Virus record (IMG/VR): IMGVR_UViG_3300032116_000001
Location: 310,001-374,000 of that record
DNA length: 64,000 bases
Direction: 5' to 3' (one strand)
The notes under the pieces were generated by a model, which did not search any database, was not told the DNA's origin, and worked only from the letters and a program-made list of their open reading frames with translations. Shown in pieces: positions 6,422 through 62,545 of this stretch (positions within the stretch are counted from its first letter, which is position 1; every line of letters starts with the position of its first letter). The position numbers and the translations under genes are program-made.

Positions 6422-6486
6422 TTTTTACACATTGAAACAAAATTCAAACGGTATGCGTATAATAAATATACAAACAATTTGATTGC

Positions 6487-6565: not shown

Positions 6566-6569
6566 AATC

Positions 6570-6626: not shown

Positions 6627-6710
6627 AGTTTCTCGTACATTGCGGTCTGAGATGACCGCCCCGATCATAAAATAAAACAATCAATGGAAAGCGACTATCA
6701 CTATACCATT

Positions 6711-6802
6711 GGGTGATGACTCCCCTGCATGTCTGTAAAACATGTGCCGCATCAGAACGTGGGGAAATATGGCGAGAGGTGAAATTCCTCCATCACCCAC
6801 CA
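6711..6802 (+). ncRNA. non-canonical tRNA-Tyr(GTA)-like RNA (8/4 stem, no D arm)
   Basis: GGGTGATG/CATCACCC, CATGT-ctGTAaa-ACATG, GAGG-TGAAATT-CCTC, ACCA end. Confidence 0.65.
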
Positions 6803-6847
6803 CGACATTCAATGCGAAGGCATTAACGACCATAACAGATAAAGCAA

Positions 6848-6932
6848 GGGAGTATCGCATAGAGGCAATTGCGGGAGACTGTAAATCTCCTCTGGAAACA
6901 GTTCGTAGGTTCGAGTCCTGCTGCTCCCACCA
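6848..6932 (+). tRNA. tRNA-Tyr(GTA)
   Basis: GGAGA-ctGTAaa-TCTCC, long variable arm, CCA. Confidence 0.95.
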
Positions 6933-14729: not shown

Positions 14730-14804
14730 GGCGTCCGTAGCTCAATGGCAGAGCACCTGACTGTGGCTCAGGAAGCGCGGGTTCGATCCCCGTCGGACGC
14801 CCCA
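14730..14804 (+). tRNA. tRNA-His(GTG)
   Basis: G-1, CCTGA-ctGTGgc-TCAGG, C73, CCA. Confidence 0.95.
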
Positions 14805-38032: not shown

Positions 38033-40057
38033 ATGAAATCATTAGCTATTTCGCGTGTGCAAACGATGCTAAGAAGTGCATCGAGTTTAGATAAAATTGG
38101 CAAGTATGCAAGTGCTGATATTTTATCTAATGCTGCGCATCATATGTTAAAAAAGATTTCTCAAACAAACATGTCAACAAGAATTCCTGCTGATTCATAC
38201 ATGGAAAAATATATGGATCAATACAAGGATTATTTTGGAGAGCCAACTATTGATAAAGATGGTTCTCCAAAATATTATACGGATCAATATGATGATATAG
38301 ACCATTCTTATGTCTTTGCGCTGAAAAATAACCCAACCGCGATAGATAATCTTAGACCAAGTGAATTAAAATACTGGCATAAAAGACAGACGCAGATGCA
38401 TGATTACGAGCCAGATCATCAAACGTGGGATCATTTAAAGCATTCTTTTGAAAGAGGAACTCCCGAATATGATCATTATCTTAGGCTTTTGTCTCGCGAT
38501 CCTGTTTACGAAAATATCAATCCCGATGATTTGATTAATTATGTGAAATCACAGCAAGATCAATATAGCCGTGGAGACTGGAGCAATCCAACGGACTGGA
38601 ATGTTGCTCATTCTCTTCTTCGAGCTGCTAATCACTATTTAATACATGATAATTTTGATTATAAAAATTATGTTTCTGACATCGAAAGTCCTTACAATCT
38701 TACAAGCCCCTTAAATCAGCAGCAAGTTGATGATCGCCGAGCCCTTAATTTAGTAATGGAACGAGATAAACCCATGGTCAAACTGCCTCCTACAGAGGCA
38801 TACAGACTGGGCGACGGATCATTGATCCATTTTAACATGGGTCGCAGAGACACTATATTAAGACATTTTACAAAAGATGATGTCGATAAGCCTTACGACG
38901 AACTAATTGCGCGAAGCCTGTTAAGCAATGATAAAGACATAGCAAGCGAAAAGCTCAACAGCATTAAAGAAAAAATGAAAAATATTTATCGGATGACCCC
39001 CGAAAACACAGAAAATTATTATCATTATCTGAAAGTTTTCGCTATGTATCCTAATTTAATCGGAACATCATTAAAAAACATTGATGAAATCGTATCTAAT
39101 CTAAATGAAGGGCAAGACGGGTCAAATGACATGGGAAGACTCATGGTTGTCTTTAATAAAAATTGGCGACAATGGGTGGCTAAATTTAATAATGATGTTC
39201 ACGAAGCTGCGCAAATCTTGCCAATGGGCAGTACACAGGACTTGCGCGGACTAGGCGATTTGCTAATGCAGTGGTATGGCAAGGTCAAAACTACAGATTT
39301 GTACACAATAGCCTCATATTGGCCAAATCTTACCGCAGAAGATAAATCACTTCCTATTGATCAACTAGCTGATCGAGTTCGATATTACAAAGTCAGGCAG
39401 CTTTTTAAAGCAGAAAGCATTAATCATCCTTCTTTTGCAATCGAGGCAGCCAAATGGTGGCAATCTGCCGAGGGCGACGAGGATGATGCATGGCTTAACA
39501 TTGATGAAGATGATGACACAGAGCCGTTCGATTATGAAAACATTGAAAAATTGTTTATCGACTCTCAAAATGTACCCCTCCCTGTTTGGGCTTCATACAC
39601 AGCAAGTATTGGTGGGTTGACTGGAAGATTTTTGCCTCGTTCAGACGTCCGCGGGTTGTTCCTGGGTCAATACAGCAATTCCTGTCAACATCCCTGGGGA
39701 GTTGGAGCAAGTTGCGCAATTCACGGCCAAACCTCGCCGCATGGAGCATTTTTTGTTGTTGAAGACCAGAAAGGCAACATCATCGCCCAAAGTTGGGTGT
39801 GGGAAGATTATGACGGAGATGTTGTTTTTGATAATGTCGAGGCGCTTGGCATTGGCGACAGAAGAATGCCAATAGTTCAGTCAATTTATAAAACTGTAGC
39901 GGAACAAATGGAAGGCCGTATAGTTCACATAGGAACGGGCGGAAGCGACTTGGATTTGGAACCATTTAAAGACACAGACTTTCGACTCGCGCCAAATGAT
40001 TATTATGGGTATCGAGACTCCACAAGACAAAAAATACTCGCAGACAACACTTATTAA
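38033..40057 (+). CDS. large protein with C-terminal PcfJ/GNAT-like domain
   Basis: LFLGQYSNSCQH...FFVVEDQKGNIIAQSWVW...FDNVE. Confidence 0.6.
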   Translation: MKSLAISRVQTMLRSASSLDKIGKYASADILSNAAHHMLKKISQTNMSTRIPADSYMEKYMDQYKDYFGEPTIDKDGSPKYYTDQYDDIDHSYVFALKNNPTAIDNLRPSELKYWHKRQTQMHDYEPDHQTWDHLKHSFERGTPEYDHYLRLLSRDPVYENINPDDLINYVKSQQDQYSRGDWSNPTDWNVAHSLLRAANHYLIHDNFDYKNYVSDIESPYNLTSPLNQQQVDDRRALNLVMERDKPMVKLPPTEAYRLGDGSLIHFNMGRRDTILRHFTKDDVDKPYDELIARSLLSNDKDIASEKLNSIKEKMKNIYRMTPENTENYYHYLKVFAMYPNLIGTSLKNIDEIVSNLNEGQDGSNDMGRLMVVFNKNWRQWVAKFNNDVHEAAQILPMGSTQDLRGLGDLLMQWYGKVKTTDLYTIASYWPNLTAEDKSLPIDQLADRVRYYKVRQLFKAESINHPSFAIEAAKWWQSAEGDEDDAWLNIDEDDDTEPFDYENIEKLFIDSQNVPLPVWASYTASIGGLTGRFLPRSDVRGLFLGQYSNSCQHPWGVGASCAIHGQTSPHGAFFVVEDQKGNIIAQSWVWEDYDGDVVFDNVEALGIGDRRMPIVQSIYKTVAEQMEGRIVHIGTGGSDLDLEPFKDTDFRLAPNDYYGYRDSTRQKILADNTY

Positions 40058-41523
40058 TTATTCGATGATGTTAGCTGCTTTCTGGCGTCATATAATTCTC
40101 TAAATTTTCTAATTTTTTCTCTGACTTGTTGATTATTTATTTTTAATCCGTTAATCAAAATTGTCAGGAATCTTGCGCGTAAATCGTCACGTTCCCATGA
40201 TGACATTTTGCGGTCGAGAAGTGAGTCAAACTGGCTTTGCCATTTTTCCATTTCCTCTTCATACTCATCTTCGTCTTCAAAATTATTCTCTGGCTCCTCT
40301 GGCATTAAATAATATATTTCGTCTTTCAATTCTTTTTCTGCCTTGTTTTTATAATCTTCAAAAAAACTGTCAACCTCATCGTATGAAGTTGTGTAATTCC
40401 AATAATATTTATCGAACTTACGCTTTTCGGCTAACTGTTCATCTCTTTTTGCTAAAATCTTTAGTAAACTATAAGCAGCATCATCAGCATAACGATCTTC
40501 TAACTGTCCCCACGTATTTTCAAATTTGTCCAGAGTGTTTTCCACTGCATATAATACATCTAATTTAGTGAAATCAGTGTCTTGAGCCAGTCCATATTGA
40601 TCTATTTCTGCCCCGTATTGATCGATATGATCGGCAACAGATTTCATGTCAACTCCGTCTAAATTAAATTCTTTTGTAATCAGCGATTCTTCCCATTTTT
40701 GCACTGGCAGATTTTCAACCCACTCTTTAATATATGATTGGTAATCTTCGCTTAGCACACGATTGGAGTGCCCCTTAATTTCAGAAATCTCCCCATATTC
40801 GTTCATCCTTATGGTCGCTACTGGATGATTTGTTTCGTCTCTTAGGGAAAATATTTGGTATTTCCCTTCTTTTACATCATCGCAGTATGTTCCAACGCAG
40901 TGATTCATTTTATTTCCCTCCGCTCTAAGATCATTCTCAGATGTGACTAACTGCATCGTGTACCCATCATCGTAATCGTAAACTACATTTGCGGGACTAA
41001 TTGGCTCATACATTAATCCAGAACCCTTGCCAGCCATCATTGTGTGCCATTCTTCGGACATTTTGACAGCCGAGGCCCAATCATAAGAAGAGAGCTGGAA
41101 TCTCGATTGTCCTTGGTCATCGAGGGGGTGACGTGCGATTTCGTAATTATACCAATCTTTAATCGCATCTGCCTGATTAATAATTTCCAGATTGTCAATG
41201 GCATATTTTCTACCATTGGGGTCCAACCTCATTTTCTTTACTTGAATCAAAAGCCATTTTGCAAATTGTGGAATATTTTGATAGCGCATGTAAAGATTAG
41301 ATTCAAAATTGCTTTGCTGATTTTGTTCAGTTTTGATATTAGCAAGATTTTGAATTTCTTCTATCGTGGCGTTTGGTTTGTTTCTGACAATATTCACATA
41401 AATTTTTTGGTGATCGGGGTTCTGATCACCAATCCACGCAATAACATGATCGGGAACACCAAGTGACTTTAAATATTCCTCTTGGGTCCCCGATATGCAA
41501 ACTTTTGCGTATTTATACCACAC
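40054..41523 (-). CDS. MWY-tagged PcfJ-like domain protein
   Basis: MWYKYAK; DLRAEGNKMNHCVGTYC...IFSLRDETNHPVATIRM; paralog of 19190-21757. Confidence 0.75.
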   Translation of the reverse strand: MWYKYAKVCISGTQEEYLKSLGVPDHVIAWIGDQNPDHQKIYVNIVRNKPNATIEEIQNLANIKTEQNQQSNFESNLYMRYQNIPQFAKWLLIQVKKMRLDPNGRKYAIDNLEIINQADAIKDWYNYEIARHPLDDQGQSRFQLSSYDWASAVKMSEEWHTMMAGKGSGLMYEPISPANVVYDYDDGYTMQLVTSENDLRAEGNKMNHCVGTYCDDVKEGKYQIFSLRDETNHPVATIRMNEYGEISEIKGHSNRVLSEDYQSYIKEWVENLPVQKWEESLITKEFNLDGVDMKSVADHIDQYGAEIDQYGLAQDTDFTKLDVLYAVENTLDKFENTWGQLEDRYADDAAYSLLKILAKRDEQLAEKRKFDKYYWNYTTSYDEVDSFFEDYKNKAEKELKDEIYYLMPEEPENNFEDEDEYEEEMEKWQSQFDSLLDRKMSSWERDDLRARFLTILINGLKINNQQVREKIRKFRELYDARKQLTSSNN

Positions 41524-44368: not shown

Positions 44369-45154
44369 CTATCGAAGCGGATTGTGTTTATTTTCTTTGT
44401 TATGCCTCATTAAAATGCTTGGCCAAAACGTTTCAGGCGGATATGATAGAATTTTTTTCTCAATTTTCTTTTTTAGAAAAATCTTGTGAAAATATGCAGT
44501 TAAAAACCTCCAGCCATCGGCTCTTATCACCACCAAGCATCTTCGCATAGGATCAAAATCCACAATCATAAAACGCTTTTTGTTTGACATTTTGGTTCCA
44601 GCCATGACGAAATTATACTTTTCGGGGCTCCATGTGTGAGACAGACAAGTATAATTAATTGGCAAAAGGTAAAAACCAGTTTTTGACTTAGGAATGCTAA
44701 TTTTGTAAGGTGGGTTCATTTTCATTTCAGTCTTAAAATATAAATATTTTGATTCCATTATGATCTTATCATACGTGTTTGCAAAGGTTTGAATGCCTCT
44801 GTGAAAAAGCCAACTGAGGCAGAATATACCGTCTGTTCGGGCTGTTAAGTATTGGAGTTTCTTGGGATCATTTCGGACAATTCTTATTTTCATATCAGTC
44901 CCGACTACCTTTGAGCCTTCTATTTTAAGAAACGCAGACGACATGTCCTGATATTTGAGTTCTGCCATTGCCCAAGGTTTTGTGGGCCAAAATAAATCAT
45001 ATGTCACTTTAACATGCGCTGGTTTAATAGCTAAATTGGGATCGAGTCCGATCACTTCAGGAGATACTTGATATTTTTTGGGGTCTATCAAAACATTTTC
45101 ATGTTTAGTGGGCACGAGAGTTATTGTTTTCATTTCCATATTATTAAATTCCAA
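44369..45154 (-). CDS. hypothetical protein
   Basis: 261-aa ORF. Confidence 0.6.
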
Positions 45155-46232
45155 GCATTTGTTTGAAGGGATCGTTTTCTTCGGAATAATTATTTTCTTC
45201 CCATTTTAACAACTCGCTATCTGTCAAAATACAATTATTCCAGAGTGACTCTATTTGTTTTTTGTCTATTCCTATGCCAATGAAAACGATTTGTGACATA
45301 GGAGTTTCATTTCCCCATGGCATGCAATACTCGACAACACGCTGGTTACCAGCTTGAGCAATGATATATTTGTAATTGGGATTTGAGCTTGTATAAAACC
45401 ATCCCTTAACGCGCAATGCGCCTTTCCATTCTTTTTTCATGGCTTCTGCCACTCTTTCAGATTTTAGGGGCATGTTCGTAGAAAAGACAAAACTACTAAA
45501 GCCGTATTCATCAATCTCAGATTCATGACCGTTATGAAGTTCTTCCCACCAGCCTGGATGTTGTGTTGCTTGATGCATGTTAAACAATTCAGTGTCCAGA
45601 ATTTCATCAATATTAACTTCTCCATTGGTGGCAGTAATTATCTTTGATTTCGGATTCATCTTTTTCACAAAAGACAAAACTTCTTGTTTCTTGTCTTCGC
45701 TTACAAGATCGCATTTATTCACAACAATGATGTCTGCAAATTCAATTTGATCGACAAGCAATTGGCTTAGGGGCTTTTCGGCTCCATCCGCTGCATGATT
45801 TTGTTTAAGATTTTCCACGATTGATGAAGCATCAACAACTGTCACCATAGCGTCTAGCCGCGCAATATCTCCAAGCACTCTATTGTCGTCAATTGGCATT
45901 GCAAATGTATTCGCCACGGGCATAGGTTCGGATATACCCGTGGATTCTACGATCAAATAATCATACTTTTCCTCAAGTGCCAATCGGGAAATTTCTTTTA
46001 GCAAATCTTGCCTTAAAGTACAACAAATACAACCATTTGTCAACTCAACAACATCTTCATCGGCTCTGACAATCTTGCCTTTAATAGACTCAGCATCGAT
46101 GTTAATTTCAGACATGTCATTAATAATCAAGGCAACTTTATATTTATTTTGATTACTAAGAATATGATTCAATAAAGTAGTTTTGCCCGCGCCTAAAAAG
46201 CCCGACAAAACTGAAACTGGCAATTTATTCAT
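45144..46232 (-). CDS. COG0523 (CobW/YciC/ZigA) G3E GTPase metallochaperone
   Basis: [27 protein letters not shown]. Confidence 0.92.
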
Positions 46233-48427: not shown

Positions 48428-49225
48428 TTACTTATCGTGGTTGCCAATCCAGTCAGGACATCCTTTCCATCCCTTGTTTTTGTATGTAAGGTGTGGACAT
48501 GACGGAATGTTATATGGTCTTTCTTCAGATGCAGAAAACTTATTCCAATCCTGCGAACTTTGGAGTCCCAGTGATCGAACATAATCCCGAGCAGATTCAA
48601 AATCAAGAAACTTTCCTCCTCTTCGCCTAGTTTTTGTACCAAGCCAATCACCATAGCCTTCCCATCCTTGGTTCTCATATTTTTTACAAGGCAACCACGG
48701 TATGTTATTGGGCTTTTGACCTGATTTGCAATAGGAAAACCATTCTTTCGCGTTTTTCAATCCCAGTGATCGAGCATAATCGCGAGCAGACTCAAAATCA
48801 AGATATTGGCGGTATCGATATGATACTGATTTAGTACCAAGCCAATCACCAAGAGAAACCCATCCTTTATCTTTGTAGATAGACCTTGGTGCTGAAGGTA
48901 TATTACTGGGCCTTTGACCAGATTTAATATAAGCTTCCCATTCTTTTGCATTTTTCAAATTCAATGACCGAACATAATCGCGAGCAGACTCAAAATCAAG
49001 GTATTGACGATTTCTTGGTGATAATCTATTATTTCCTAACCAATCCCCCCATCCTTTCCATCCTTGATCTTTGTAAACTGTGGTCGGTGAGCTAGGAATA
49101 TTACAGGGCTTCAGGCCCGATCTGCAATAAGATAGCCAATCTGTGAAACTTTTTAAATTCAATGACTGAACATAATCGCGAGCAGACTCAAAATCAAGAT
49201 ACTTGCTTGTTTTAGTAATTGACAT
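48428..49225 (-). CDS. protein made only of four phage-integrase-type repeat units
   Basis: 4x FESARDY.RSL.LK...W..Y...G..P.NIP..P...YK..GW....DW[LI]G. Confidence 0.8.
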   Translation of the reverse strand: MSITKTSKYLDFESARDYVQSLNLKSFTDWLSYCRSGLKPCNIPSSPTTVYKDQGWKGWGDWLGNNRLSPRNRQYLDFESARDYVRSLNLKNAKEWEAYIKSGQRPSNIPSAPRSIYKDKGWVSLGDWLGTKSVSYRYRQYLDFESARDYARSLGLKNAKEWFSYCKSGQKPNNIPWLPCKKYENQGWEGYGDWLGTKTRRRGGKFLDFESARDYVRSLGLQSSQDWNKFSASEERPYNIPSCPHLTYKNKGWKGCPDWIGNHDK

Positions 49226-49379: not shown

Positions 49380-50147
49380 TCAATCATCAATCGTTTCATA
49401 AGATGATCGAGCGCGAGGTTGATCTTGTGCTTGGGCCTTTTTTACCTCTTGCCCTCTTTTTGAATCATGCTCTAAGTTACGACGCTTCATGTTAAATTTA
49501 AACTTAATTACTTGCAGTCGCGCCCATTCAGTAAGACTTCCAAGAACTTTAACATCTTGATCAATCATGATATCAATTTTCTTCACCATGAGTGTTTTTG
49601 GCATCGCGCCATCAAGGGCTATGAAAACATTTTCGCTGAATTTTTTCATATTGGCAAGGCCAACGACGGGATGGTTAAATTTAAGATACGGATCACATTT
49701 TACAGTGTAAATTGCTTTAATCCTGCGGTAGCGGGTGCTGCCGAAAAGCCTTGCGTACCAGGGAACAATCATTTTGTCATAATCAAGGCGAGTGCTGAAA
49801 TGTATGTTTATAAGTTGATTTTCCCATGCCCCTCTCTTCATGGCGTCCATACTCTTGAACGTCACGGCCACTGACTGAATATGTCTATGACTTCGGGGAA
49901 CTGGTTCAGACGCTGCTGCACCCCACATACCTTGTGTCGCCGTTCTGATGGCAACTTCCATGTCTTTAAACGGCTGGTCTTCACTAAGCTCAACTCCAAT
50001 TTCTGCCCAGTTTTTGCGAATTTCTTTCCAGTGGTCCTCATTGATTGACGCAGCGGTCGCATCATGTTGTGAGTTGTTTTGAACGGGAGAAAATTTTATA
50101 TCTTTCTCCACAGTCTTTTTTGTCCTTTTGTTTTTATTTTTTGACAT
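49380..50147 (-). CDS. hypothetical protein, duplicate copy B
   Basis: paralog of 50266-51033. Confidence 0.7.
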   Translation of the reverse strand: MSKNKNKRTKKTVEKDIKFSPVQNNSQHDATAASINEDHWKEIRKNWAEIGVELSEDQPFKDMEVAIRTATQGMWGAAASEPVPRSHRHIQSVAVTFKSMDAMKRGAWENQLINIHFSTRLDYDKMIVPWYARLFGSTRYRRIKAIYTVKCDPYLKFNHPVVGLANMKKFSENVFIALDGAMPKTLMVKKIDIMIDQDVKVLGSLTEWARLQVIKFKFNMKRRNLEHDSKRGQEVKKAQAQDQPRARSSYETIDD

Positions 50148-50265: not shown

Positions 50266-51033
50266 TCAATCATCAATCGTTTCATAAGATGATCGAGCAT
50301 GGAGCTGGTCTGGCGCTCGACCTCTTTTCACATCATGCTCTGCTTTGCGACGCTTATTGTTAAATTTAAACTTAATTACTTGCATTTTCATCCATTTGGT
50401 AAGATTGCCCAAGCCTGTAACATCTTGATCAATTTTGACATTAATCTTCTTTATAATGAATGTTTTAGGAATCGTGGCACTGATGGCTTTATAAGCATTT
50501 TCGTGAATAGTTTTTGCATCAGAATTAATAGTTATAGGATGAAGCAAATCAAGATATGGTTCAAATCCCACAGTGTAGACTGCCTTAACACTGCGAAAAC
50601 GCTTAAAGTTGAAAATCCTTACATGCCACGGCATAATCATTTTATCATATTTAAGCCCAGTGTTAAAGTGTATGTTCATGATTTGTGTCTCCCATTCACC
50701 TTTTTTTAAGCCCTTTGGGCTTGTGATTTTGACGTTCACCAATTTTCTACCCTGATGGGCTGTTGAGTTGTTTATCATCTGAGTTTGTCTTGTCACGTCC
50801 CACAATGGTTCCGCCGCACCGCTAATGGCATTTTTCATGTCTTCAATAGGCTTGTCCTCGCTAAGTTCAACTCCGTGTTCTGACCAAGACTTACGAAGTG
50901 ATGACCAGTGTTCCTCATTATGACTTAGCAACATGGGAGTCGCACCGTGGCGCGAATAGGCTTTAGAAACAGGAATTGTTACCTTATTTTCGACAGATTT
51001 TTTTGTCGCTTCGTTATTTTTATTTTTTGACAT
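50266..51033 (-). CDS. hypothetical protein, duplicate copy A
   Basis: start MSKNKN; shared C-terminus ARSSYETIDD. Confidence 0.7.
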   Translation of the reverse strand: MSKNKNNEATKKSVENKVTIPVSKAYSRHGATPMLLSHNEEHWSSLRKSWSEHGVELSEDKPIEDMKNAISGAAEPLWDVTRQTQMINNSTAHQGRKLVNVKITSPKGLKKGEWETQIMNIHFNTGLKYDKMIMPWHVRIFNFKRFRSVKAVYTVGFEPYLDLLHPITINSDAKTIHENAYKAISATIPKTFIIKKINVKIDQDVTGLGNLTKWMKMQVIKFKFNNKRRKAEHDVKRGRAPDQLHARSSYETIDD

Positions 51034-51121
51034 GTTTTTACATCCCTTTGTTTTTATAGGCTTGCCAATACCATTATTCCACAATAAAATATATAAACGA
51101 TTGTGATTCGAAAGCCCCGCA

Positions 51122-54100
51122 TTACAGGGGCTTTCTTGCTGTTACATAAAGGAATTGGTATCTAATTTCCTGTTCTTCGATCACAAATCCAGCTGATTCA
51201 ATTTCCTGAATCAATTCTGACACACAATCGGACCAGCGATCCTTTGGCTCTGCGATCATAAGTGTCCCGCCGTTCGCAAGGCAACGATGAGCTTCTGTTA
51301 GATACTCTCCAAGATTGCATCCCATGAGCGAAAGCGAGAATACAGCAACGTCAATATCGCCGTTCATCAAAGGAATTTTAGATATATCACAAGATACAAC
51401 GTCTTCATTGATCGCGATATGATCGAAGCTGTGAACTCGATGATTTGGCAATGCCTTGGCAAGCAAGGCCTCTCCACACCCGAGATCAGCCACTACTAAT
51501 CGCTGTGACATTTGATTGATTTTCTCAGCAATCTTTTCGTAAGGAATCTCTTCCCAGTTCTTTCGTTTGTCCCCATAGAGCGTGTGATACAGATACCATT
51601 CCGATGGGTCATCTTGAAGCCGCTTGTGTGTTTTTTGTGAATTCGTGATGTTCCATCGACGATTCATTTCACTAAAATCACCATGGCGACGTTTTGCTTC
51701 TATTTCTACTTCGGGCGGAAGCGGAATGATCAGCATGGAGCGATCAATTAGCATAATCTCGTCGTTTTCCAGTCGCTCAACCCACTTATCAAGAGCTTCT
51801 TGCGACTTCTTAAGCATCTTAGAAGGATCAGCAAGCTCACCCTTCGCAACAGTGCCATCTACGGCACAATCCGCAAGTGTTCGTTTATAGTGGATACGAC
51901 CAAGGCGAGACTCGTCATAGGACCAGCGCAAAGGCTTAATGCCTCCTTCCACGAAGCCTTCCACGTAAACCACGGGGATCACAATGTCTACACCTTCATC
52001 AGTAAACTTACTGCCCTGGCGATGGATGCGACCAATTAGCTGATGGTATTCTGCCGCAGTCCAGGGCAACGATGAAATCACCATTCGGTTGGAGACATGT
52101 TGCAATCCATCCACACCCGTAGACACAGGCTTGCTACCAACGAGAACATCTACCTTGCCATCGCGGAACAAGTCCACGCCCGTATTGTCTTCACCCGTGA
52201 AAATACCAACCTTTAACTTAAGTTTAGCGCGAATCTCGTCAGCAATCATTTGTGTGAGTTCTCCCCCACCGACGTAATGCGAATAAACAATCGTACCTTT
52301 TTTAATATTGGCCAATAGTGTAGGCATTTTGATTTTGAGCAATGCTCGTTCCATCGCCACAACATCGCCCTTGGGTACTTTAAGCAAATTATCGATATGA
52401 TCGGAAGCATCAATTTCAGGATGATGTTCGCGAGGCTGATCCATATACGAAGGGCGGTAACGAATGCCATTAATCACCAAGTGGTAATGCAGCCTTAAGG
52501 CGTTGTTCACGTTCGACTTGTGCATCAAATCTTTGTATTCATGGCCAGTTACAAATTCTAGAAGCTTTTTGCCCTCCATCAAATTATTGATCACAGGCGT
52601 CGCACTCATGCCTAATACCTTGAGTTCTGGATTATTTTCCTGGGCTTGAACCCGAAGGGCGCGAAGAATCTGCAATCGCTTCGATTCGTCTTCTGATCGT
52701 TGCTTAATGTTATGAATTTCATCGATCACAAGGAAGTCAATACTCGCGCTTTCCAATAGTTTTCGCACATAATTACTTGAATTTGGCTGTTGGAAAGATT
52801 CAAAGTTCAGAATAACATAGTTGTGCTTGTCTCTATCAAAATCTACTGTATCAAGGTCTTTCGTAAACACAACGCTATCGGGGAATGTGTTCTTGATAAC
52901 AGATTCCCAGCCGCTTAAAGTAGCGTTCATGGCTACGATCACCGTGACACGAGCATCGATCACGCGACTAGTGAAAACCGCGCTGAGAGTTTTGCCAGCC
53001 CCTGTGCCGCTCATATTCAAAACGTAGCTTTGATTTTGCACCAAAACCGTCGTCAGGCGTTGCATCATATTAGGAAGTGTGATTTCCGTTTGCCCCTTGA
53101 GTCTGAATTTATATCCGTCAGGAATGGGAATGTTTTTCGCCTGTTCTAGCTGTGTCAAAAACTTGTTAACGATGACTTGATAATATTCACCCTTATCGGA
53201 ATAACTCAGCACTTCCTGAATATCAGGAGCGTTGATGTCTTCCCCGTTATTCAGAAAAGCGTTCCACAATCGCTGAGTGCGATTGGCAATCATGAAGCCA
53301 ATCGCTTCACCGTCGGCCATCGCAGGAATATTTCCCACAAGGTTATCGGGCGTGGAAAAGTCGCGGCTCTTAAGCGGCTTGATAGGATGATTCGCTGTCA
53401 GAGCAGCAATGCCCGTGGCACGAGGGCCATTTGCTTCATCATCGGCTACTGTATCAACCACTTGATAATCATCAAAGTCATCAAAATCATCTAATTCTTC
53501 ATCCGTGATTTCGCCGTTCTCGATGGCATCTTCAGTATCCTTAATAATTTCATCTAATATAGCTTGCTTCTCTTCATCTGACTTATTGGAGTCGATGATT
53601 TCCTCTAGTCTTTTAATAAGTTTAGAGGCTTTAGATGTGCCTAAAGATGCCGCCTTGGCGAGCCCGCTTTGCATTTGTATCAAGTAAAGCTCGCTGGCGT
53701 CCAAATACGGAGCAAGAGACTGAATGGATTTCAAGAATCCCAAATATGATCGGGAGTTCCAATGGCCCTGATAGCCAAGGAAATCTGACCAAGAAGTCCA
53801 TCCCCGATCTTTATAGGACTTAGAGGGATCACCAGGAATATCATCGGGCTTTTGTCCTGATTTACAATAGGGTGACCATTCACCTTGTGACTTCAATCGC
53901 AATGATCTAGCATAATCACGAGCATCTTCAAATGGCCTAAAAACACGATCTTGAGGGGCGACAGTTCCAGTTCCCAACCAATCACCCATCCCAATCCATC
54001 CCTGATCTTTATATGACTGATGAGGAGCGACAGGAATATCATCAGGTTTTTGCCCTGATTTACAATAGGATTTCCATTCCTCAAGATTCTTTAATCCCAG

Positions 54101-55351
54101 TGATCTAGCATAATCACGAGCATCTTCAAACGGCTTGTAAACACGATCTTGAGAGGCGATAGTTCCCGTTCCTAACCAATCACCATATCCATTCCATCCC
54201 TGATCTTTATATGATCTATCGGGATTAGCAGGAATATCATCAGGTTTTTGTCCCGATTTGTAATAGGATTTCCATTCCTCACGATTCTTCAGCCCCAATG
54301 ATCTGGCATGATCGCGAGCATCTTCGAATGGCCTAAAAACACGATCTTGAGGGGCGACAGTTCCAGTTCCTAACCAATCGCCATATCCATTCCATCCCTG
54401 ATCTTTATAAACGTGATCGGGAGCGGCAGGAATATCATCAGGTTTTTGCCCTGATTTACAATAGGATTTCCATTCCTCAAGATTCTTTAATCCCAATGAT
54501 CTGGCATGATCGCGAGCATCTTCAAACGGCCTAAAAACACGATCTTGAAGGGCGATAGTTCCAGTTCCTAACCAATCGCCATATCCATTCCATCCCTGAT
54601 CTTTATAAACGTGATCGGGATGGGCAGGAATATCATCAGGTTTTTGTCCCGATTTACAATAAGAATACCATTCATCACGATTCTTCAATCCCAATGATCT
54701 AGTATAATCGCGAGCATTTTCAAACGGCTTGTAAACACGATTAAAACTGGCGATAGTTCCAGTTCCCAACCAATCACCCATCCCAATCCATCCCTGATCT
54801 TTATATGACTGATAGGGAGCGGCAGGAATATCATCAGGTTTTTGTCCCGATTTACAGTAGGATTCCCATTCACGTAGTGATTTTAATCCCAATGATCTAA
54901 CCTGATCGCGAGCATTTTCAAACGGCTTGTAAACACGATTAAAACTGGCGATAGTTCCAGTTCCCAACCAATCACCCCATCCTTTCCATTCCTGATCCTT
55001 GTAGGACCTATCGGGATTATAAGGAATATCATCAGGTTTTTGTCCCGATTTGCAATATGATTTCCATTCACGTAGTGATTTTAATCCCAATGACCTAGCA
55101 TGATCGCGAGCATCTTCAAACGGCTTGTAAACACGATCTTTAGGAGCGATAGTTCCAGTTCCTAACCAATCACCCCATCCTTTCCATCCCTTATCCTTGT
55201 AAGACCTATCGGGAGTAGTAGGAATATCATCAGGTCTTTGTCCCGATTTGCAATAAGATGACCATTCCTCACGATTCTTCAATCCCAATGATCTAGCGTA
55301 ATCCCGAGCAGATTTGAAGTCTAAAAATTTTCTTGTTTTAGTAATTGACAT
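51122..55351 (-). CDS. 8x repeat domain + SF2 (SNF2-like) helicase + class I SAM methyltransferase
   Basis: SGTGAGKT, DEIH, SATP, QLIGRIHRQG; VADLGCGEA...AVFSLSLMG. Confidence 0.88.
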   Translation of the reverse strand: MSITKTRKFLDFKSARDYARSLGLKNREEWSSYCKSGQRPDDIPTTPDRSYKDKGWKGWGDWLGTGTIAPKDRVYKPFEDARDHARSLGLKSLREWKSYCKSGQKPDDIPYNPDRSYKDQEWKGWGDWLGTGTIASFNRVYKPFENARDQVRSLGLKSLREWESYCKSGQKPDDIPAAPYQSYKDQGWIGMGDWLGTGTIASFNRVYKPFENARDYTRSLGLKNRDEWYSYCKSGQKPDDIPAHPDHVYKDQGWNGYGDWLGTGTIALQDRVFRPFEDARDHARSLGLKNLEEWKSYCKSGQKPDDIPAAPDHVYKDQGWNGYGDWLGTGTVAPQDRVFRPFEDARDHARSLGLKNREEWKSYYKSGQKPDDIPANPDRSYKDQGWNGYGDWLGTGTIASQDRVYKPFEDARDYARSLGLKNLEEWKSYCKSGQKPDDIPVAPHQSYKDQGWIGMGDWLGTGTVAPQDRVFRPFEDARDYARSLRLKSQGEWSPYCKSGQKPDDIPGDPSKSYKDRGWTSWSDFLGYQGHWNSRSYLGFLKSIQSLAPYLDASELYLIQMQSGLAKAASLGTSKASKLIKRLEEIIDSNKSDEEKQAILDEIIKDTEDAIENGEITDEELDDFDDFDDYQVVDTVADDEANGPRATGIAALTANHPIKPLKSRDFSTPDNLVGNIPAMADGEAIGFMIANRTQRLWNAFLNNGEDINAPDIQEVLSYSDKGEYYQVIVNKFLTQLEQAKNIPIPDGYKFRLKGQTEITLPNMMQRLTTVLVQNQSYVLNMSGTGAGKTLSAVFTSRVIDARVTVIVAMNATLSGWESVIKNTFPDSVVFTKDLDTVDFDRDKHNYVILNFESFQQPNSSNYVRKLLESASIDFLVIDEIHNIKQRSEDESKRLQILRALRVQAQENNPELKVLGMSATPVINNLMEGKKLLEFVTGHEYKDLMHKSNVNNALRLHYHLVINGIRYRPSYMDQPREHHPEIDASDHIDNLLKVPKGDVVAMERALLKIKMPTLLANIKKGTIVYSHYVGGGELTQMIADEIRAKLKLKVGIFTGEDNTGVDLFRDGKVDVLVGSKPVSTGVDGLQHVSNRMVISSLPWTAAEYHQLIGRIHRQGSKFTDEGVDIVIPVVYVEGFVEGGIKPLRWSYDESRLGRIHYKRTLADCAVDGTVAKGELADPSKMLKKSQEALDKWVERLENDEIMLIDRSMLIIPLPPEVEIEAKRRHGDFSEMNRRWNITNSQKTHKRLQDDPSEWYLYHTLYGDKRKNWEEIPYEKIAEKINQMSQRLVVADLGCGEALLAKALPNHRVHSFDHIAINEDVVSCDISKIPLMNGDIDVAVFSLSLMGCNLGEYLTEAHRCLANGGTLMIAEPKDRWSDCVSELIQEIESAGFVIEEQEIRYQFLYVTARKPL
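53773..55330 (-). repeat. eight 198-bp (66-aa) coding tandem repeats
   Basis: unit YKPFEDARDHARSLGLK...GDWLGTGTIA...RV. Confidence 0.92.
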
Positions 55352-58364: not shown

Positions 58365-58730
58365 TTATGATTTTCTCCGCAATAGATTTTTAGCCGTGCC
58401 GCTATTTTCTTTTCCTGGTCTTACCCAGGCAATATCTTCGTCAGAGGCCAATGTCATAGCTTCGTCCCGATCAGTATCCGATTCATATCCCCCTTTGGTT
58501 GGAAAACCAGGGTTGTATCTCGGGGAATCAAACATATGAAATATGGTGACTTTTAATCCTGATGCTGATCGAAGAGACCAAAGATAATCAATCGCCATGC
58601 GATCAGTTCCTGGGGCATCGCCGATCACAAAATGATCGCCATTTACCACAGAACTAAAAATTTTCCCAACATAATGTTTTTCAAATTCTTTCGGAGTAAT
58701 ATCCAAATGACCGCTAATGAATTTGATCAT
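58365..58730 (-). CDS. SLOG/DprA-like Rossmann-fold protein
   Basis: FISGH...FVIGDAPGTDRMA...RDEAMT..SDEDIAW...SGTAKN. Confidence 0.5.
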   Translation of the reverse strand: MIKFISGHLDITPKEFEKHYVGKIFSSVVNGDHFVIGDAPGTDRMAIDYLWSLRSASGLKVTIFHMFDSPRYNPGFPTKGGYESDTDRDEAMTLASDEDIAWVRPGKENSGTAKNLLRRKS

Positions 58731-59683
58731 AAAAACACCCCCTTTTCCAGCGCGGAAAGTTCCCATTCCACATTTGCCCTGGCCGTGCTTTCCATCGTAG
58801 GAGTTGCAGCACGACTAGTATAAATCTTTGGACGATCAAGCATGCCCTCAAGGAAGTTTATTCGTCCCTTTCTATAATCGGGGTCTGATATGTGGCCGTA
58901 CTCTTTTCTTATAGCGCGAGCATATCTCATATACTTATTTGTTGATGTTGAAAATACTTCCATATCCGCATCTAAAAGCATGGCAACAACTGGGCTTTCC
59001 GTTTTATGATGCTTTGTTGCCATGATGCCACGTTCATGATTTCTTCCAGGCCAGAGATCAAGAATACTTGGTAATTCGTTTTTATTTAACCCCGCGCCCA
59101 TTGAATTCACTTGGCGAAAATAATTAATATCATTCATATTTGATAACATGAATTCAGCTGAATTTTGCTCATTATTCATATCTCCGATTTGATAACAAAT
59201 ATCGTGATACAAGGCGTCAATCAAAAGCCAAGGATAGTTTATCCCCGAGTGCTTAAGTAAAAACAAAACAACTTCTCGCATGTGCTTTTCATTGTGCCAA
59301 AACCTATGAGGTTCTGAATAACAAGCGCTGATGTTTCTGGCAATTGCTTCAATGTTTTCTTTGCATACGTATCTATCAAAAACCATATTAAAAACATCGG
59401 ACGCATTTGGTAAAAGCCAATCAACTTTAGGGTCATTGACGCAAAATGCTTCAACCTGGCGATATATAGTGTGTCTGAGGCTGAAATTTGCGGGGGATAC
59501 TTCAGAATAATTCAACCATCTGGATTTAGAAGCTCCAAAACAACTGCACCGAACCTTGACCTTTTCTCTCGATTTTCGATTATCGACAATTTCTCCGATA
59601 TTTAGCGCATATCTATGCCTACTATCGGGATCAGTAAACACGAACGGGGTGTTTACCGATACTATTTTCTTTACATCCAGCAT
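58727..59683 (-). CDS. HD-superfamily phosphohydrolase (COG4339-like)
   Basis: YSEPHRFWHNEKH, LYHDICY, NEQNSA, ATKHH, LLDADM. Confidence 0.8.
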   Translation of the reverse strand: MLDVKKIVSVNTPFVFTDPDSRHRYALNIGEIVDNRKSREKVKVRCSCFGASKSRWLNYSEVSPANFSLRHTIYRQVEAFCVNDPKVDWLLPNASDVFNMVFDRYVCKENIEAIARNISACYSEPHRFWHNEKHMREVVLFLLKHSGINYPWLLIDALYHDICYQIGDMNNEQNSAEFMLSNMNDINYFRQVNSMGAGLNKNELPSILDLWPGRNHERGIMATKHHKTESPVVAMLLDADMEVFSTSTNKYMRYARAIRKEYGHISDPDYRKGRINFLEGMLDRPKIYTSRAATPTMESTARANVEWELSALEKGVFL

Positions 59684-59691
59684 ATTATTCC

Positions 59692-60552
59692 TTAATTGTT
59701 ATTTTTAAAATCATCAGGCAAAGATTCCATAAGCGGATACGGAAGATTTTCTACATCCACCCATTCCCATCGATCACACTTGTCTGGCTCTTTGTTTTCC
59801 AGAACTCCTCCCGCTAACTTACAAGCAACGTAAAGGGTGATATAATGCTTTTTAAGATCATGGTATATTGTTTTTGTGTATCCATATCTTCGAGAATTAT
59901 TATCGGGAATTACTACAAGCCCAGTTTCTTCTAATGTTTCTCTTATAGCCGTTTCTTCTGGTGTTTCTCCCCACTCCATATGTCCTCCAGGGAACGCCCA
60001 GCACCCATCGCCAAGCTTGGATTTTCTCAATCCCATAAGGACTTGTTTGCGACTATCGTCTTTGAAAATAATTGCACCTACTCCTACAAGCGGGCCTTCG
60101 GGGACAATAGTTTTTCCTCCGAAGGCCTCGGAGTCCATAAAGGCATTTAACAACAAGGAATACACTCGCGAATTGGGTCTTCGCCGCTCGTAAAATTCAC
60201 GATCATTGCCATTATAGAACTTGGAAATTGCGGCCCCGATCCCAGCCGACCTTGAAATGCCAGCCTCACAATGAACTACGATGGTTGTCAATTCAGGCCA
60301 TAACTTCACGAAATTTACAATTTGACTTGCGTCACTTTCCGTAAACAAAACCCCGCCCCTATCTGAAGAATAATCCAAGTCATGGAATTGAAGGCTCAAA
60401 ACATCAAGTCTATTTGGGCATGATCTCAAAGAAACACGCTTGCTACCAGGATCGGAAACTGAAATAACAATATAGGGATCATTCAACTGAAAATGACTCA
60501 TGTCATGTCTTGATAAGACGTGAATGTGACGGATGCTTCCGCGAAACAACAT
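59692..60552 (-). CDS. PTP-like (CX5R) phosphatase fused to Nudix hydrolase
   Basis: VHCEAGISRSAG; PGGHMEWGETPEETAIRETLEETG. Confidence 0.88.
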   Translation of the reverse strand: MLFRGSIRHIHVLSRHDMSHFQLNDPYIVISVSDPGSKRVSLRSCPNRLDVLSLQFHDLDYSSDRGGVLFTESDASQIVNFVKLWPELTTIVVHCEAGISRSAGIGAAISKFYNGNDREFYERRRPNSRVYSLLLNAFMDSEAFGGKTIVPEGPLVGVGAIIFKDDSRKQVLMGLRKSKLGDGCWAFPGGHMEWGETPEETAIRETLEETGLVVIPDNNSRRYGYTKTIYHDLKKHYITLYVACKLAGGVLENKEPDKCDRWEWVDVENLPYPLMESLPDDFKNNN

Positions 60553-62469: not shown

Positions 62470-62545
62470 TGGTGCGGGGGAGGGATTCGAACCCATCGAG
62501 ACTCCAGGGTATGAACCTGGCATGATACCTCTTCACCACCCCGCA
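62470..62545 (-). tRNA. tRNA with CAT anticodon (Met or Ile2)
   Basis: CCAGG-ttCATac-CCTGG, TTCGAAT loop, 3' CCA; irregular T stem/acceptor register. Confidence 0.8.

What the first reader, a model, noticed from the sequence alone, without database searches (positions are those of the whole stretch)
53773..55330. Eight 66-aa repeats with hypervariable positions: possible modular nucleic-acid recognition code
Seen: an invariant scaffold with variation concentrated at four sites: after LGLK (NRE/SLR/SLR/NRD/NLE/NRE/NLE/SQG), after DDIP (TT/YN/AA/AH/AA/AN/VA/GD-P-DRS/DRS/YQS/DHV/DHV/DRS/HQS/SKS), GW-xGx and A-xxx-R. Variants recur in different combinations, implying recombination between units. 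Known: the unit resembles the phage-integrase repeat family of unknown function. Inference: a TALE/PPR-like targeting array for the helicase-MTase.
Basis: partly seen in the sequence, partly recalled or inferred. Interest (0 to 1): 0.65.

Follow-up and report, generated by a model that had tools for sequence, protein, structure and literature searches.

The report
Repeat array on phage helicase-methyltransferase
A freshwater jumbo phage encodes a helicase–methyltransferase whose N-terminus is eight copies of a small, uncharacterised 66-residue domain (Pfam INT_rpt); comparison with thousands of relatives suggests a swappable nucleic-acid-binding/targeting module, but not a TALE-like one-residue-per-base code.

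Summary
ORF 51122-55351(-), 1409 aa, starts with eight in-register 66-aa units (window 53747-55330), then an acidic linker, an SF2 helicase and an Rrp8-type methyltransferase. The units are Pfam INT_rpt (function unknown).

About 17 of 66 codons vary at roughly the neutral rate (dN/dS ~1). The other 49 are strongly constrained (0.06). Variants are mosaic between units (recombination test p<=0.0006). No reverse transcriptase is encoded in the genome, so a DGR is not the source.

The same helicase-MTase core occurs in over 1100 proteins with 0-12 INT_rpt units. Cores that are 93-99% identical carry unrelated arrays, and identity collapses exactly at the array boundary. Other members carry zinc-finger arrays (DUF4379, DUF723-like) in the same position.

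Across 6363 clusters INT_rpt arrays are fused to helicases, Mrr, Vsr-like and GIY-YIG nucleases, an integrase and TIR. A shape search also finds the unit fold in LAGLIDADG endonuclease and IS66 transposase clusters.

AlphaFold gives confident, independent small helical domains on flexible linkers, not a solenoid. No solved fold matches.

Verdict: a swappable nucleic-acid-binding or targeting array is plausible. A TALE/PPR-like code is not supported: variable sites form a continuum, and several are core positions.

The parts
51122..55351 (-). Whole gene (P0001, 1409 aa): INT_rpt array, then linker, SF2 helicase and Rrp8-type methyltransferase.
   Evidence: ORF list and translation; Pfam domains. 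The start ATG is supported by the shared N-terminus MSITKT..(F/Y)LDF with paralog P0272.
55133..55330 (-). Repeat unit 1 (aa 8-73); its N-terminal edge diverges from the other units.
   Evidence: Register from the RSL[GR]LK spacing of 66 aa.
54935..55132 (-). Repeat unit 2 (aa 74-139).
54737..54934 (-). Repeat unit 3 (aa 140-205).
54539..54736 (-). Repeat unit 4 (aa 206-271).
54341..54538 (-). Repeat unit 5 (aa 272-337); this unit was used for the single-unit AlphaFold model.
54143..54340 (-). Repeat unit 6 (aa 338-403).
53945..54142 (-). Repeat unit 7 (aa 404-469).
53747..53944 (-). Repeat unit 8 (aa 470-535). It is the most divergent unit (59-67% nt identity to the others), and its tail runs into the junction region.
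53057..53746 (-). Junction helix plus acidic linker (aa 536-765; net charge -19, pI 4.3). A motif of the type ..FL.S...L.P.L...ELY.I...SGL follows the array and is also found after the alternative arrays of relatives.
   Evidence: Charge; consensus after the DUF4379 arrays; N-terminal sequences of relatives.
52004..53056 (-). SF2 helicase/translocase core (aa ~766-1116). The Walker A GxGAGKT, DEIH, SAT and QxxGRxxRxG motifs are all retained.
   Evidence: Pfam ResIII, DEAD and Helicase_C; invariant columns of family alignment A5; weak PDB profile matches to Hel308, reverse gyrase and XPB helicase domains.
51158..51703 (-). Class I SAM methyltransferase of the Rrp8 type (Methyltransf_8; aa 1217-1398). 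The motifs DxGCGE and FSLSLMG are retained.
   Evidence: Pfam 150.7 bits; human RRP8 structure 2zfu at E=1.9e-29 with the single sequence and 3.7e-51 with the family profile; invariant columns.
48428..49225 (-). Paralogous array-only gene (P0272, 265 aa, four INT_rpt units, pI 9.5). It has the same MSITKT N-terminus and lies 1.9 kb downstream of P0001. It is the only other carrier of the repeat in the 379-kb genome.

Best explanation
The eight units are independent small helical INT_rpt domains strung on short conserved linkers. They act as a modular, exchangeable nucleic-acid-binding array, most likely for DNA, that anchors or targets the attached SF2 translocase and Rrp8-type methyltransferase.

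Specificity or affinity would come from the complement and number of units. This is closer to zinc-finger arrays or the NUMOD modules of homing endonucleases than to TALE or PPR solenoids. Arrays are re-assorted by unit duplication, loss and recombination rather than by point hypermutation.

Shown:
- the repeat anatomy;
- family membership;
- intact helicase and MTase motifs;
- the predicted bead-on-string architecture;
- the array as the fast-turnover, swappable part of the family;
- the partner spectrum.

Inferred:
- that the ligand is nucleic acid;
- that units differ in preference;
- what the methyltransferase modifies.
For: 1. Domain partners. In 61 non-repeat segments from the 150 best of 6363 INT_rpt clusters, the partners were SF2 helicases (27), Mrr_cat_2 (8), Mrr_cat, MTES_1575 and DUF559 Vsr-like nucleases, GIY-YIG, an integrase, and TIR. 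The unit fold also recurs in ESM-Atlas models of phage LAGLIDADG endonuclease and IS66-type transposase clusters (TM by query 0.82-0.83, rmsd 0.9-1.1 A over 59-60 residues).

2. Positional equivalence. The same helicase-MTase core carries 0-12 INT_rpt units. In 58 of 59 INT_rpt-less N-termini it carries arrays of DUF4379 treble-clef zinc fingers, with DUF723-like zinc ribbons in phage contigs and Sigma70_r4 (Pfam match) in 12 of the 59. The N-terminal module type changes at least 27 times on a tree of 208 cores.

3. Turnover.
- Cores 93-99% identical carry arrays with different unit numbers, whose units are only 37-77% identical, no better than paralogs.
- Identity falls from 98-100% to 30-60% at the array boundary.
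- In the Pseudanabaena-clade loci, core dS is 0.17-0.32 but best-matching units have dS 0.55-1.6, so old units are re-assorted.

4. Chemistry. Family units carry a mean net charge of +2.75, with conserved basic columns 3, 9, 13, 18, 28, 32, 45 and 66.

5. Structure. Unit pLDDT is 87-95, linkers dip to 58-80, and array pTM is 0.43.

6. Trans-encoded arrays. A related jumbo-phage locus has six array-only genes directly upstream of an array-less core gene, and this phage has its own array-only paralog.

7. Enzyme parts are intact.
Against: - No binding experiment or nucleic-acid co-fold was possible.
- The unit has no solved structural relative: the VIA wide search gave a best Z of 2.8, Foldseek found none, and the profile search of PDB sequences found none. 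The fold therefore gives no functional anchor.
- The phage array itself is nearly neutral in charge (+5 over 528 aa; units -2 to +4).
- Variable codons have dN/dS ~1, and their combinations form a continuum. Unit-specific recognition is therefore not demonstrated, and neutral surface drift fits as well.
- Array-less cores of about 800 aa are common, so the array is dispensable for the enzyme.
- The methyltransferase is closest to an rRNA m1A enzyme, so the substrate could be RNA.
- TIR fusions are also typical of protein-sensing defence proteins.
Confidence: 0.45

Rival explanations
1. Sequence-independent avidity tether. Each unit binds the nucleic-acid backbone weakly or a generic feature, the array only adds valency, and the variable residues are unconstrained surface positions. 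Array differences between relatives reflect the inherent instability of tandem repeats, not selection for new targets.
For: - dN/dS is ~1 at the variable codons and 0.06 elsewhere.
- In Pseudanabaena-clade units, variable-column dN/dS is 0.3-1.3.
- Variable-site combinations form a continuum.
- Unit number ranges freely from 0 to 12.
- Linkers are flexible.
- The array is sequence-stable in the phage population across four independent freshwater studies (12 studies hold the locus, 2017-2025), with no unit-number joints.
Against: - In the few co-linear ortholog pairs, the variable columns stay 76-84% identical (versus 29-32% between paralogous units) at 87-90% core identity. This suggests some unit-specific constraint, but it is indirect because no DNA was obtainable.
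- The sharp identity break at the array boundary between 98-100% identical cores looks like module exchange.
- One phage keeps six different array genes next to one core.
Confidence: 0.25
2. Protein or other-ligand sensor. The array recognises a protein of a competing phage or of the host, or a non-nucleic-acid polymer or small molecule, as repeat sensors do in STAND/Avs-type defence proteins. It thereby switches on the helicase-MTase or other effectors.
For: - Fusions to TIR and to Mrr-type nucleases, and many array-only proteins.
- Fast array turnover typical of conflict genes.
- Bacterial copies sit alone among toxin-antitoxin and transposase genes.
- The domain is aromatic-rich, with invariant W23.
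Against: - Most partners are enzymes that themselves need a DNA-binding module: homing endonucleases, an integrase, transposase, Vsr-like and GIY-YIG nucleases.
- The array is positionally replaced by zinc-finger or zinc-ribbon arrays and Sigma70_r4.
- Conserved basic columns are present.
- PADLOC models of known defence systems give only marginal helicase hits.
Confidence: 0.15
3. One reading: a true TALE/PPR-like code in which each unit reads one base or short element through a handful of hypervariable residues, so the target can be read off the array.
For: - Variation is concentrated in the first turn of helix 2 (columns 19-21, 24) and the 38-43 loop and short helix, which are polar family-wide.
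- The same columns are the most variable across the family (Spearman rho 0.40, p=0.0007).
- Variants recur in new combinations.
Against: - No solenoid is predicted, and the unit is twice the length of TALE, PPR or PUF repeats.
- About 17-24 variable columns exist, not 2-3.
- Hundreds of combinations occur, without dominant states.
- dN/dS is ~1.
- Some variable columns are core-type hydrophobic positions.
- Pfam TAL_effector matches seen on relatives are summed sub-threshold echoes inside DUF4379 units.
Confidence: 0.07
4. Assembly artefact: the array or its mosaic pattern is a chimera produced by short-read assembly of a repeat.
For: Short-read assemblies break inside the array. Only 82-256-bp pieces are recovered there, and another assembly's gene call starts inside unit 6 (P0002).
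Against: - All unit-specific pieces recur with 0 differences in four independent studies, apart from one piece in run X7 with 3 differing letters.
- P0002 independently confirms units 6-8 and the rest of the protein (1057 of 1058 residues identical).
- The reading frame is intact across 1.6 kb.
- Relatives show the same architecture.
Confidence: 0.02

Closest known systems
Pfam PF14882 INT_rpt ('Integrase repeat unit', formerly PHINT_rpt)
   Same: The sequence family is the same. Matches are above the gathering score, and the same predicted fold is found in Atlas INT_rpt clusters (TM 0.95-0.98).
   Different: Pfam gives no function or structure. The only paper found that models it reports no usable template (PMC8078820). 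Here the repeat is attached to a helicase-MTase, not an integrase.
TALE repeats (PF03377), PPR and PUF arrays
   Same: They are tandem repeats with a conserved scaffold and variable positions, fused or coupled to effector functions, and arrays evolve by recombination between units.
   Different: Those repeats are 33-36 aa helical hairpins that form a rigid superhelix, with 1-3 code residues and a few dominant states. Here the units are 66 aa, are predicted as independent domains (array pTM 0.43), have about 17 or more variable columns and show a continuum of states. There is no Pfam match.
C2H2 zinc-finger arrays (e.g. PRDM9 or KRAB-ZNF) - functional analogy only, from general knowledge
   Same: Small independent domains are joined by short conserved linkers. 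The arrays are encoded by minisatellite-like DNA. Units duplicate, are lost and undergo gene conversion. The array diverges much faster than the attached enzyme domain.
   Different: There are no metal ligands: the single Cys per unit is not conserved in the family. The fold is all-helical. DNA contact positions are unknown, and positive selection is not shown.
NUMOD-type modular DNA-binding domains of homing endonucleases
   Same: The partner spectrum is the same (GIY-YIG, LAGLIDADG and other nucleases), and tandem use is similar. The first half of the unit (helix, Gly-containing turn, helix) gives sub-threshold echoes of I-HmuI_NUMOD-like and HTH_50.
   Different: The matches are below Pfam cut-offs for single stretches and arise by summation over repeats. 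No structural match to HTH proteins was found. Homology is not established.
Rrp8 / NML (Methyltransf_8, PDB 2zfu), eukaryotic rRNA m1A methyltransferase
   Same: The C-terminal domain of P0001 matches at E=1.9e-29 (single sequence) and 3.7e-51 (family profile), with the SAM motifs retained.
   Different: Rrp8 is a stand-alone nucleolar enzyme. Here the domain is fused to an SF2 helicase and a repeat array in a phage and in bacteria, and the substrate is unknown.
Helicase-methyltransferase restriction or defence enzymes (Type ISP and Type III R-M, DISARM DrmD/DrmMI, BREX, Dpd, Hma)
   Same: An SF2/SNF2-like translocase is combined with a methyltransferase and a variable recognition module. Bacterial copies lie in variable regions with toxin-antitoxin and transposase genes.
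   Different: Only marginal helicase-motif hits were found: PADLOC 12-24 bits; NCBIfam 15-28 bits against cut-offs of 470-1100. There is no nuclease domain and no (D/N)PPY-type DNA MTase. There are no conserved partner genes in the four bacterial contexts inspected.

Membership tests
Pfam INT_rpt (PF14882) | HMM match above the curated gathering score (26.5 bits) | tested here: met
   34.0 bits for the whole protein; 46.3 bits for aa 1-540; 34.3 bits for paralog P0272.
Pfam INT_rpt (PF14882) | Tandem units sharing the F..A....L.L....W / P.DIP..P...Y...GW..WGDWLG scaffold | tested here: met
   Eight units at exact 66-aa spacing. The same nearly invariant columns appear in 141 diverse units.
TALE repeats | 33-35-aa repeat matching PF03377 | tested here: not met
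   Unit length is 66 aa, and there is no TAL_effector hit in P0001 even at E<=1. Hits in relatives are artefacts of DUF4379 units.
TALE repeats | Variation essentially confined to a two-residue RVD with a few recurrent states | tested here: not met
   About 17 variable columns in the phage. There are 221-311 distinct triplet combinations among 433 family units.
TALE / PPR / PUF | Units pack into a continuous superhelical solenoid | tested here: inconclusive
   AlphaFold2 gives confident units (pLDDT ~90) but linkers at 58-80 and array pTM 0.43, suggesting beads on a string. This is a prediction without ligand, and coordinates were not inspectable.
C2H2 or other zinc-finger arrays | Conserved Cys/His metal ligands in each unit | tested here: not met
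   There is one Cys per unit (column 27; Tyr in unit 6), and the family consensus at that column is Ala.
NUMOD / HTH DNA-binding modules | Significant sequence or structural match to a NUMOD or HTH family | tested here: inconclusive
   Only summed sub-threshold Pfam echoes were found (I-HmuI_NUMOD-like 16.7-31.4 bits with 0 passing stretches; HTH_50 23 bits). No HTH structure reached Z>=3.
Rrp8-type methyltransferase (Methyltransf_8) | HMM match above cut-off, match to a solved Rrp8 structure, SAM-binding motif retained | tested here: met
   150.7 bits against a cut-off of 27; 2zfu at E=1.9e-29 and 3.7e-51; DxGCGE and acidic motif residues are invariant in A5.
Rrp8-type methyltransferase (Methyltransf_8) | N1-adenine methylation of rRNA | not testable with these tools
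   This needs a biochemical assay.
SF2 helicase/translocase | Walker A, DExH, motif III and motif VI present | tested here: met
   Pfam ResIII, DEAD and Helicase_C. The invariant columns G-x-G-A-G-K-T, D-E, S-A-T and Q..G-R..R-Q include P0001.
Known anti-phage systems (DISARM, BREX, Dpd, Hma, others in PADLOC) | Full-length match to a system protein model and the system's partner genes nearby | tested here: not met
   The best PADLOC hit is 24 bits over 60 residues. NCBIfam DpdE and DrmD give 15-28 bits against cut-offs of 500-950. Neighbours have no known defence families.
Diversity-generating retroelement target | Reverse transcriptase and template repeat in the genome | tested here: not met
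   No RVT_1 match in the 378,848-bp genome. The repeat occurs only in P0001 and P0272.

The most novel reading that the evidence does not exclude
INT_rpt is a new class of modular nucleic-acid-recognition domain. Each unit would read a short DNA or RNA element through the exposed face of helix 2 (columns 19-24) and the 38-43 loop. Phages and bacteria would retarget a translocating Rrp8-type base methyltransferase, and also nucleases, an integrase and TIR effectors, by re-assorting units or whole arrays. In some jumbo phages this would draw on banks of array-only genes next to the core gene. That would make it a natural, programmable targeting scaffold alongside zinc fingers, TALEs and PPRs.
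Probability: 0.12. Interest if true: 0.85.

Novelty: new variant of a known kind. Interest (0 to 1): 0.5.

Why it matters
INT_rpt is abundant but has no known structure or function. It occurs in 6363 clusters at 50% identity and in arrays of up to 17 units.

This analysis ties it to one consistent role. It is an exchangeable N- or C-terminal module on DNA-acting enzymes, interchangeable with zinc-finger arrays on a widespread helicase and Rrp8-like methyltransferase core. That core is found in at least 218 bacterial and archaeal species and in jumbo phages.

If binding is sequence-specific, the domain would be a new modular recognition scaffold, and it would explain how these enzymes choose targets. 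If binding is not sequence-specific, the family is still an uncharacterised single-protein helicase-methyltransferase with the evolutionary signature of a conflict gene, and is worth testing as a defence or counter-defence function.

Tried and rejected
- DGR as the source of variation: no reverse transcriptase in the genome.
- Repeat-number polymorphism from P0002 (1058 aa, 3 units): it is only an N-terminally truncated gene call of the same protein.
- Polymorphism in reads: four runs from four studies show identical array pieces and no joints. Contigs cannot show rare variants or unit order.
- Fold identification. All of the following gave nothing above noise, so the unit fold stays unassigned:
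  - Foldseek with the whole array;
  - Foldseek with a single unit;
  - VIA-align against about 48,000 PDB representatives (best Z 2.8);
  - phmmer and a profile search against PDB sequences.
- TALE-like repeats in relatives: the Pfam TAL_effector, DnaJ and DUF1818 hits are summed sub-threshold echoes inside DUF4379 units, with 0 passing stretches.
- Known defence systems: PADLOC and NCBIfam gave only marginal hits.
- Close phage relatives for an ortholog test: none were found with the single protein in IMG/VR or in the phage records. The profile search found only relatives at 24-45% identity.
- Codon-level test on co-linear orthologous arrays (P0034/P0035, P0037/P0038): DNA for one member of each pair could not be fetched, so only protein-level figures are given.
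- Homology of the conserved C-terminal tail of the L098 array genes to the P0001 junction: BLASTP aligned only the units, so no such claim is made.
- Silent donor cassettes in a bacterial genome: Pseudanabaena CP101416 has only the one array gene plus a fragment.
- Literature: no paper on INT_rpt function or on helicase plus Methyltransf_8 fusions was found in the searchable library.
- Solvent exposure of the variable residues could not be computed, because model coordinates are not exposed.

Full report
**Where it is**

The window is bases 310001-374000 of a 378,848-bp IMG/VR virus record that CheckV rates complete. It is a jumbo phage with a cluster of tRNA genes and mostly unknown ORFs. The same locus occurs almost unchanged in 20 runs from 12 studies, mostly freshwater metagenomes (five are labelled fungus metagenome), dated 2017-2025.

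The finding lies in one long ORF, 51122-55351 on the minus strand, 1409 aa (P0001).

**Checking the observation**

- Tandem Repeats Finder reports a single array at 53797-55310, with period 198 bp, 7.6 copies and 85% matches.
- In the protein, RSL[GR]LK recurs exactly every 66 residues, eight times. The units are aa 8-535, window 53747-55330.
- 29 of 66 columns are identical in all eight units.
- Nucleotide identity between units is 71-90% for units 1-7 and 59-67% for unit 8.

So the repeat is real and far beyond chance. Three details need correcting.

1. Variation covers about 17 columns (2, 3, 11, 12, 19-21, 24, 38, 39, 41-43, 50, 52, 63, 64), not four sites.
2. The scaffold is not frozen at the DNA level. 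Nei-Gojobori dS among units 2-7 is 0.36-0.41.
3. The 17 variable codons have dN 0.63 and dN/dS 0.97. The other 49 have dN/dS 0.06. Because the variable class was picked for being variable, a ratio near 1 shows no positive selection. It says these positions change at about the neutral rate on a strongly constrained frame.

599 of 1326 pairs of informative sites are incompatible, and nearby sites are more compatible than permuted ones (p=0.0006 for all units; <0.0002 for units 2-7).

No reverse transcriptase is encoded in the genome, so a diversity-generating retroelement is not the source.

Contig pieces of 82-256 bp from four independent studies match the array with no differences, apart from one piece in run X7 with 3 differing letters (one reported as a variant, A>G at 54524). 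There are no joints indicating other unit numbers. The local variant combinations are therefore genuine and stable in the population. Unit order over the whole 1.6 kb could not be verified. The apparent 3-unit version P0002 is only a truncated gene call from another assembly.

**Anatomy of the protein**

- The array matches Pfam PF14882 INT_rpt above its cut-off (34 bits for the whole protein; 46 bits for the array alone).
- Next comes an acidic linker (aa 536-765, net charge -19).
- An SF2 helicase follows, with ResIII, DEAD and Helicase_C matches and all core motifs.
- The C-terminal domain is Methyltransf_8. It matches the structure of human RRP8 (2zfu) at E=1.9e-29, or 3.7e-51 with a family profile, and its SAM motifs are conserved.
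- PADLOC and NCBIfam give only marginal helicase-motif hits to DISARM, BREX and Dpd proteins.
- The only other carrier of the repeat in the genome is a 265-aa protein of four units (P0272, 48428-49225, minus strand). It has the same MSITKT N-terminus and lies 1.9 kb downstream.

**Structure**

AlphaFold2 on the array, with an alignment of 46 homologous arrays, gives mean pLDDT 88 but pTM only 0.43. Confidence is 90-96 inside units and 58-80 in the linkers.

A single unit modelled with 141 diverse units gives pLDDT 87 and pTM 0.67. It has two main helices (columns 5-14 and 20-29) and two short ones (40-43 and 52-56).

This is a string of independent mini-domains, not the continuous solenoid of TALE, PPR or PUF proteins.

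No solved structure resembles the unit:
- VIA-align against 48,161 chains gave a best Z of 2.8.
- Foldseek found nothing.
- Sequence and profile searches of the PDB found nothing.

The only literature hit for the family is a modelling survey that also lacked a template (PMC8078820).

Model coordinates are not exposed to me, so burial was judged indirectly.
- Columns 19-21, 24, 39, 41, 42, 63 and 64 are polar family-wide. They sit on the face of helix 2 opposite the conserved W23/Y26, or in loops.
- Columns 2, 11, 12 and 52 are at least 97% hydrophobic family-wide and are probably core positions. Columns 38, 43 and 50 are 60-70% hydrophobic.

**The wider family**

A library-wide HMMER search with two units finds 6363 clusters at 50% identity (4037 at E<=1e-10). 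Of the best 150:
- about half are nothing but arrays, up to 17 units;
- the rest carry the array at either end of other domains.

In 61 such non-repeat segments, Pfam finds SF2 helicase domains (27), Mrr_cat_2 (8), Methyltransf_8 (3), MTES_1575 and DUF559 nucleases, Mrr_cat, GIY-YIG, a putative integrase and TIR.

A shape search of ESM-Atlas models finds the unit fold at TM 0.81-0.98 in several kinds of cluster:
- INT_rpt clusters;
- helicase clusters;
- DUF723-plus-INT_rpt phage proteins;
- DUF559 nucleases;
- a cluster of phage LAGLIDADG endonucleases;
- an IS66-type transposase cluster.

This partner list is that of a modular DNA-binding accessory domain.

Family units are basic on average (+2.75), with conserved Lys/Arg columns. 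The phage's own units are close to neutral.

Weak Pfam echoes of NUMOD-like and HTH families in the first half of the unit are below threshold. They are leads only.

**The helicase-methyltransferase family**

A word-indexed search with aa 560-1409 gives 1149 proteins at E<=0.001. A pattern scan finds the core in 218 species genomes and in 19 viral contigs, among them jumbo phages. The bacterial and archaeal taxa include:
- Cyanobacteria;
- Chloroflexota;
- Planctomycetota;
- Verrucomicrobiota;
- Chlamydiota;
- Bacteroidota;
- an archaeon.

Among the best 120 proteins, the number of INT_rpt units runs from 0 to 12, and protein length climbs in 66-aa steps.

Members without INT_rpt are not bare. 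58 of 59 long N-termini are arrays of 6-14 DUF4379 treble-clef zinc fingers. Some phage contigs have DUF723-like zinc ribbons instead, and 12 of the 59 also match Pfam Sigma70_r4. The Pfam TAL_effector, DnaJ and DUF1818 matches reported for those zinc-finger arrays have no stretch that passes on its own and overlap the DUF4379 units. They are artefacts, not TALE repeats.

On a FastTree of 208 cores the N-terminal module type changes at least 27 times, where the minimum possible is 4. Some 'none' or 'other' labels may be truncated genes.

In the four bacterial contexts inspected the gene stands alone, with no recurrent partner. In one it lies among toxin-antitoxin and transposase genes.

**Array turnover**

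This is the most informative result.

- Proteins whose last 780 residues are 93-99% identical carry arrays with different unit numbers (4 vs 5; 5, 7 and 9; 4, 6, 7 and 8). Their units are only 37-77% identical, no closer than paralogous units within one protein.
- Along pairwise alignments, identity is 98-100% through the core and falls to 30-60% at the array boundary.
- For Pseudanabaena-clade genes with DNA, core dS is 0.17-0.32. The best-matching units have dS 0.55-1.6, with dN 0.35-0.68 at variable columns and 0.04-0.10 at conserved ones.

The arrays therefore do not diverge by local hypermutation. Old, already diverged units are re-assorted, duplicated, lost or exchanged.

A few pairs keep co-linear arrays (P0037/P0038 and P0034/P0035). 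There the variable columns are 76-84% identical, against 29-32% between paralogous units, at 87-90% core identity. This hints at some unit-specific constraint. DNA for a proper test could not be fetched.

That is unlike the few dominant states of a TALE code.

**A related locus**

In two jumbo-phage contigs (L098 and L099, 501 and 308 kb), an array-less core gene is preceded on the same strand by six array-only genes.
- They carry 3, 8, 5, 3, 4 and 3 units.
- Some have interspersed zinc ribbons.
- Most end in a conserved ~50-aa tail.

So arrays can be encoded apart from the enzyme, as in this window's P0272. Whether they act in trans is unknown. BLASTP did not link the tail to the P0001 junction.

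**Interpretation**

The best-supported reading (about 0.45) is that the INT_rpt array is an exchangeable nucleic-acid-binding module, most likely for DNA. It anchors or directs the translocase-methyltransferase. The complement of units sets affinity or preference. In its logic it is closer to zinc-finger or NUMOD arrays than to TALEs.

- Shown: the anatomy, the family, the intact enzyme motifs, the bead-on-string prediction, the swap with zinc-finger arrays, the partner spectrum, and the turnover.
- Inferred: the ligand, any sequence preference, and the methylation target. Given the Rrp8 relationship, the target could be RNA as well as DNA.

The rivals are:
- a sequence-independent avidity tether with neutral variable residues (0.25). 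dN/dS ~1, the continuum of states and the free range of unit number fit it well;
- a sensor of proteins or other ligands in a conflict system (0.15);
- an assembly artefact (0.02).

**Novelty and score**

The repeat family is catalogued but uncharacterised, and no literature on its function or on this fusion was found.

The phage gene is one member of a large family. The picture of a helicase and Rrp8-type methyltransferase with interchangeable domain arrays and sharp array turnover appears undescribed. I rate it a new variant of a known kind (modular binding arrays on nucleic-acid enzymes), with interest 0.5.

The most novel reading not excluded is a new programmable recognition scaffold. I give it a probability of about 0.12, and it would deserve about 0.85 interest if true.

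Noticed in passing
L098:2-9148 (+), identical in L099: Six consecutive array-only genes (3, 8, 5, 3, 4 and 3 INT_rpt units, some mixed with DUF723-type zinc ribbons) sit directly upstream of an array-less helicase-MTase core gene in a 501-kb phage contig. Most end in a conserved ~50-aa tail (YLSEEEF..FI ... WW..N.P..LPK...YYNK) of unknown role.
   Followed up: partly
window 48428-49225 (-): An array-only paralog (P0272, four units, pI 9.5) has the same MSITKT N-terminus as P0001. Two ORFs without any family match (49380-50147 and 50266-51084) lie between the two genes.
   Followed up: partly
window 2947-6932, 14731-14804, 24652-24722, 62471-62545: Fifteen tRNA genes, twelve of them in one cluster interleaved with small ORFs, as is typical of large phages.
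   Followed up: no
window 7218-8396 (+): A TnpB-like ORF (OrfB_IS605 plus the Cas12f1-like TNB domain) lies next to the tRNA cluster of the phage genome.
   Followed up: no
window 19190-21757 (-) and 40054-41523 (-): Two large ORFs with a PcfJ-like domain.
   Followed up: no
window 45144-46232 (-): A CobW/HypB/UreG-type metallochaperone GTPase with the CobW_C domain, encoded by the phage.
   Followed up: no
window 58727-60552 (-): Adjacent phosphohydrolase-like and NUDIX hydrolase genes (PHROG matches).
   Followed up: no
L022-L086 N-terminal regions (e.g. L077:3425-6871): DUF4379 zinc-finger arrays of 6-14 units give Pfam whole-protein E-values down to 4.5e-22 for TAL_effector, and similar for DnaJ and DUF1818, although no single stretch passes. 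This is a trap for automatic annotation of repeat proteins.
   Followed up: yes
L004 (Pseudanabaena CP101416.1, 2207422-2226643): A half-unit fragment of the array lies about 1.3 kb upstream of the helicase-MTase gene, beside a DDE transposase gene. This suggests an IS insertion clipped the array's N-terminus.
   Followed up: partly
phage records OP883945, OP752703, MN047793, AP018399, LR745208: INT_rpt arrays also occur in cultured Stenotrophomonas and Xanthomonas jumbo phages (CM1, RAS14, Xoo-sp13, XacN1) and in a 485-kb uncultured phage, where they are annotated as hypothetical proteins. These could serve as experimentally tractable sources.
   Followed up: no
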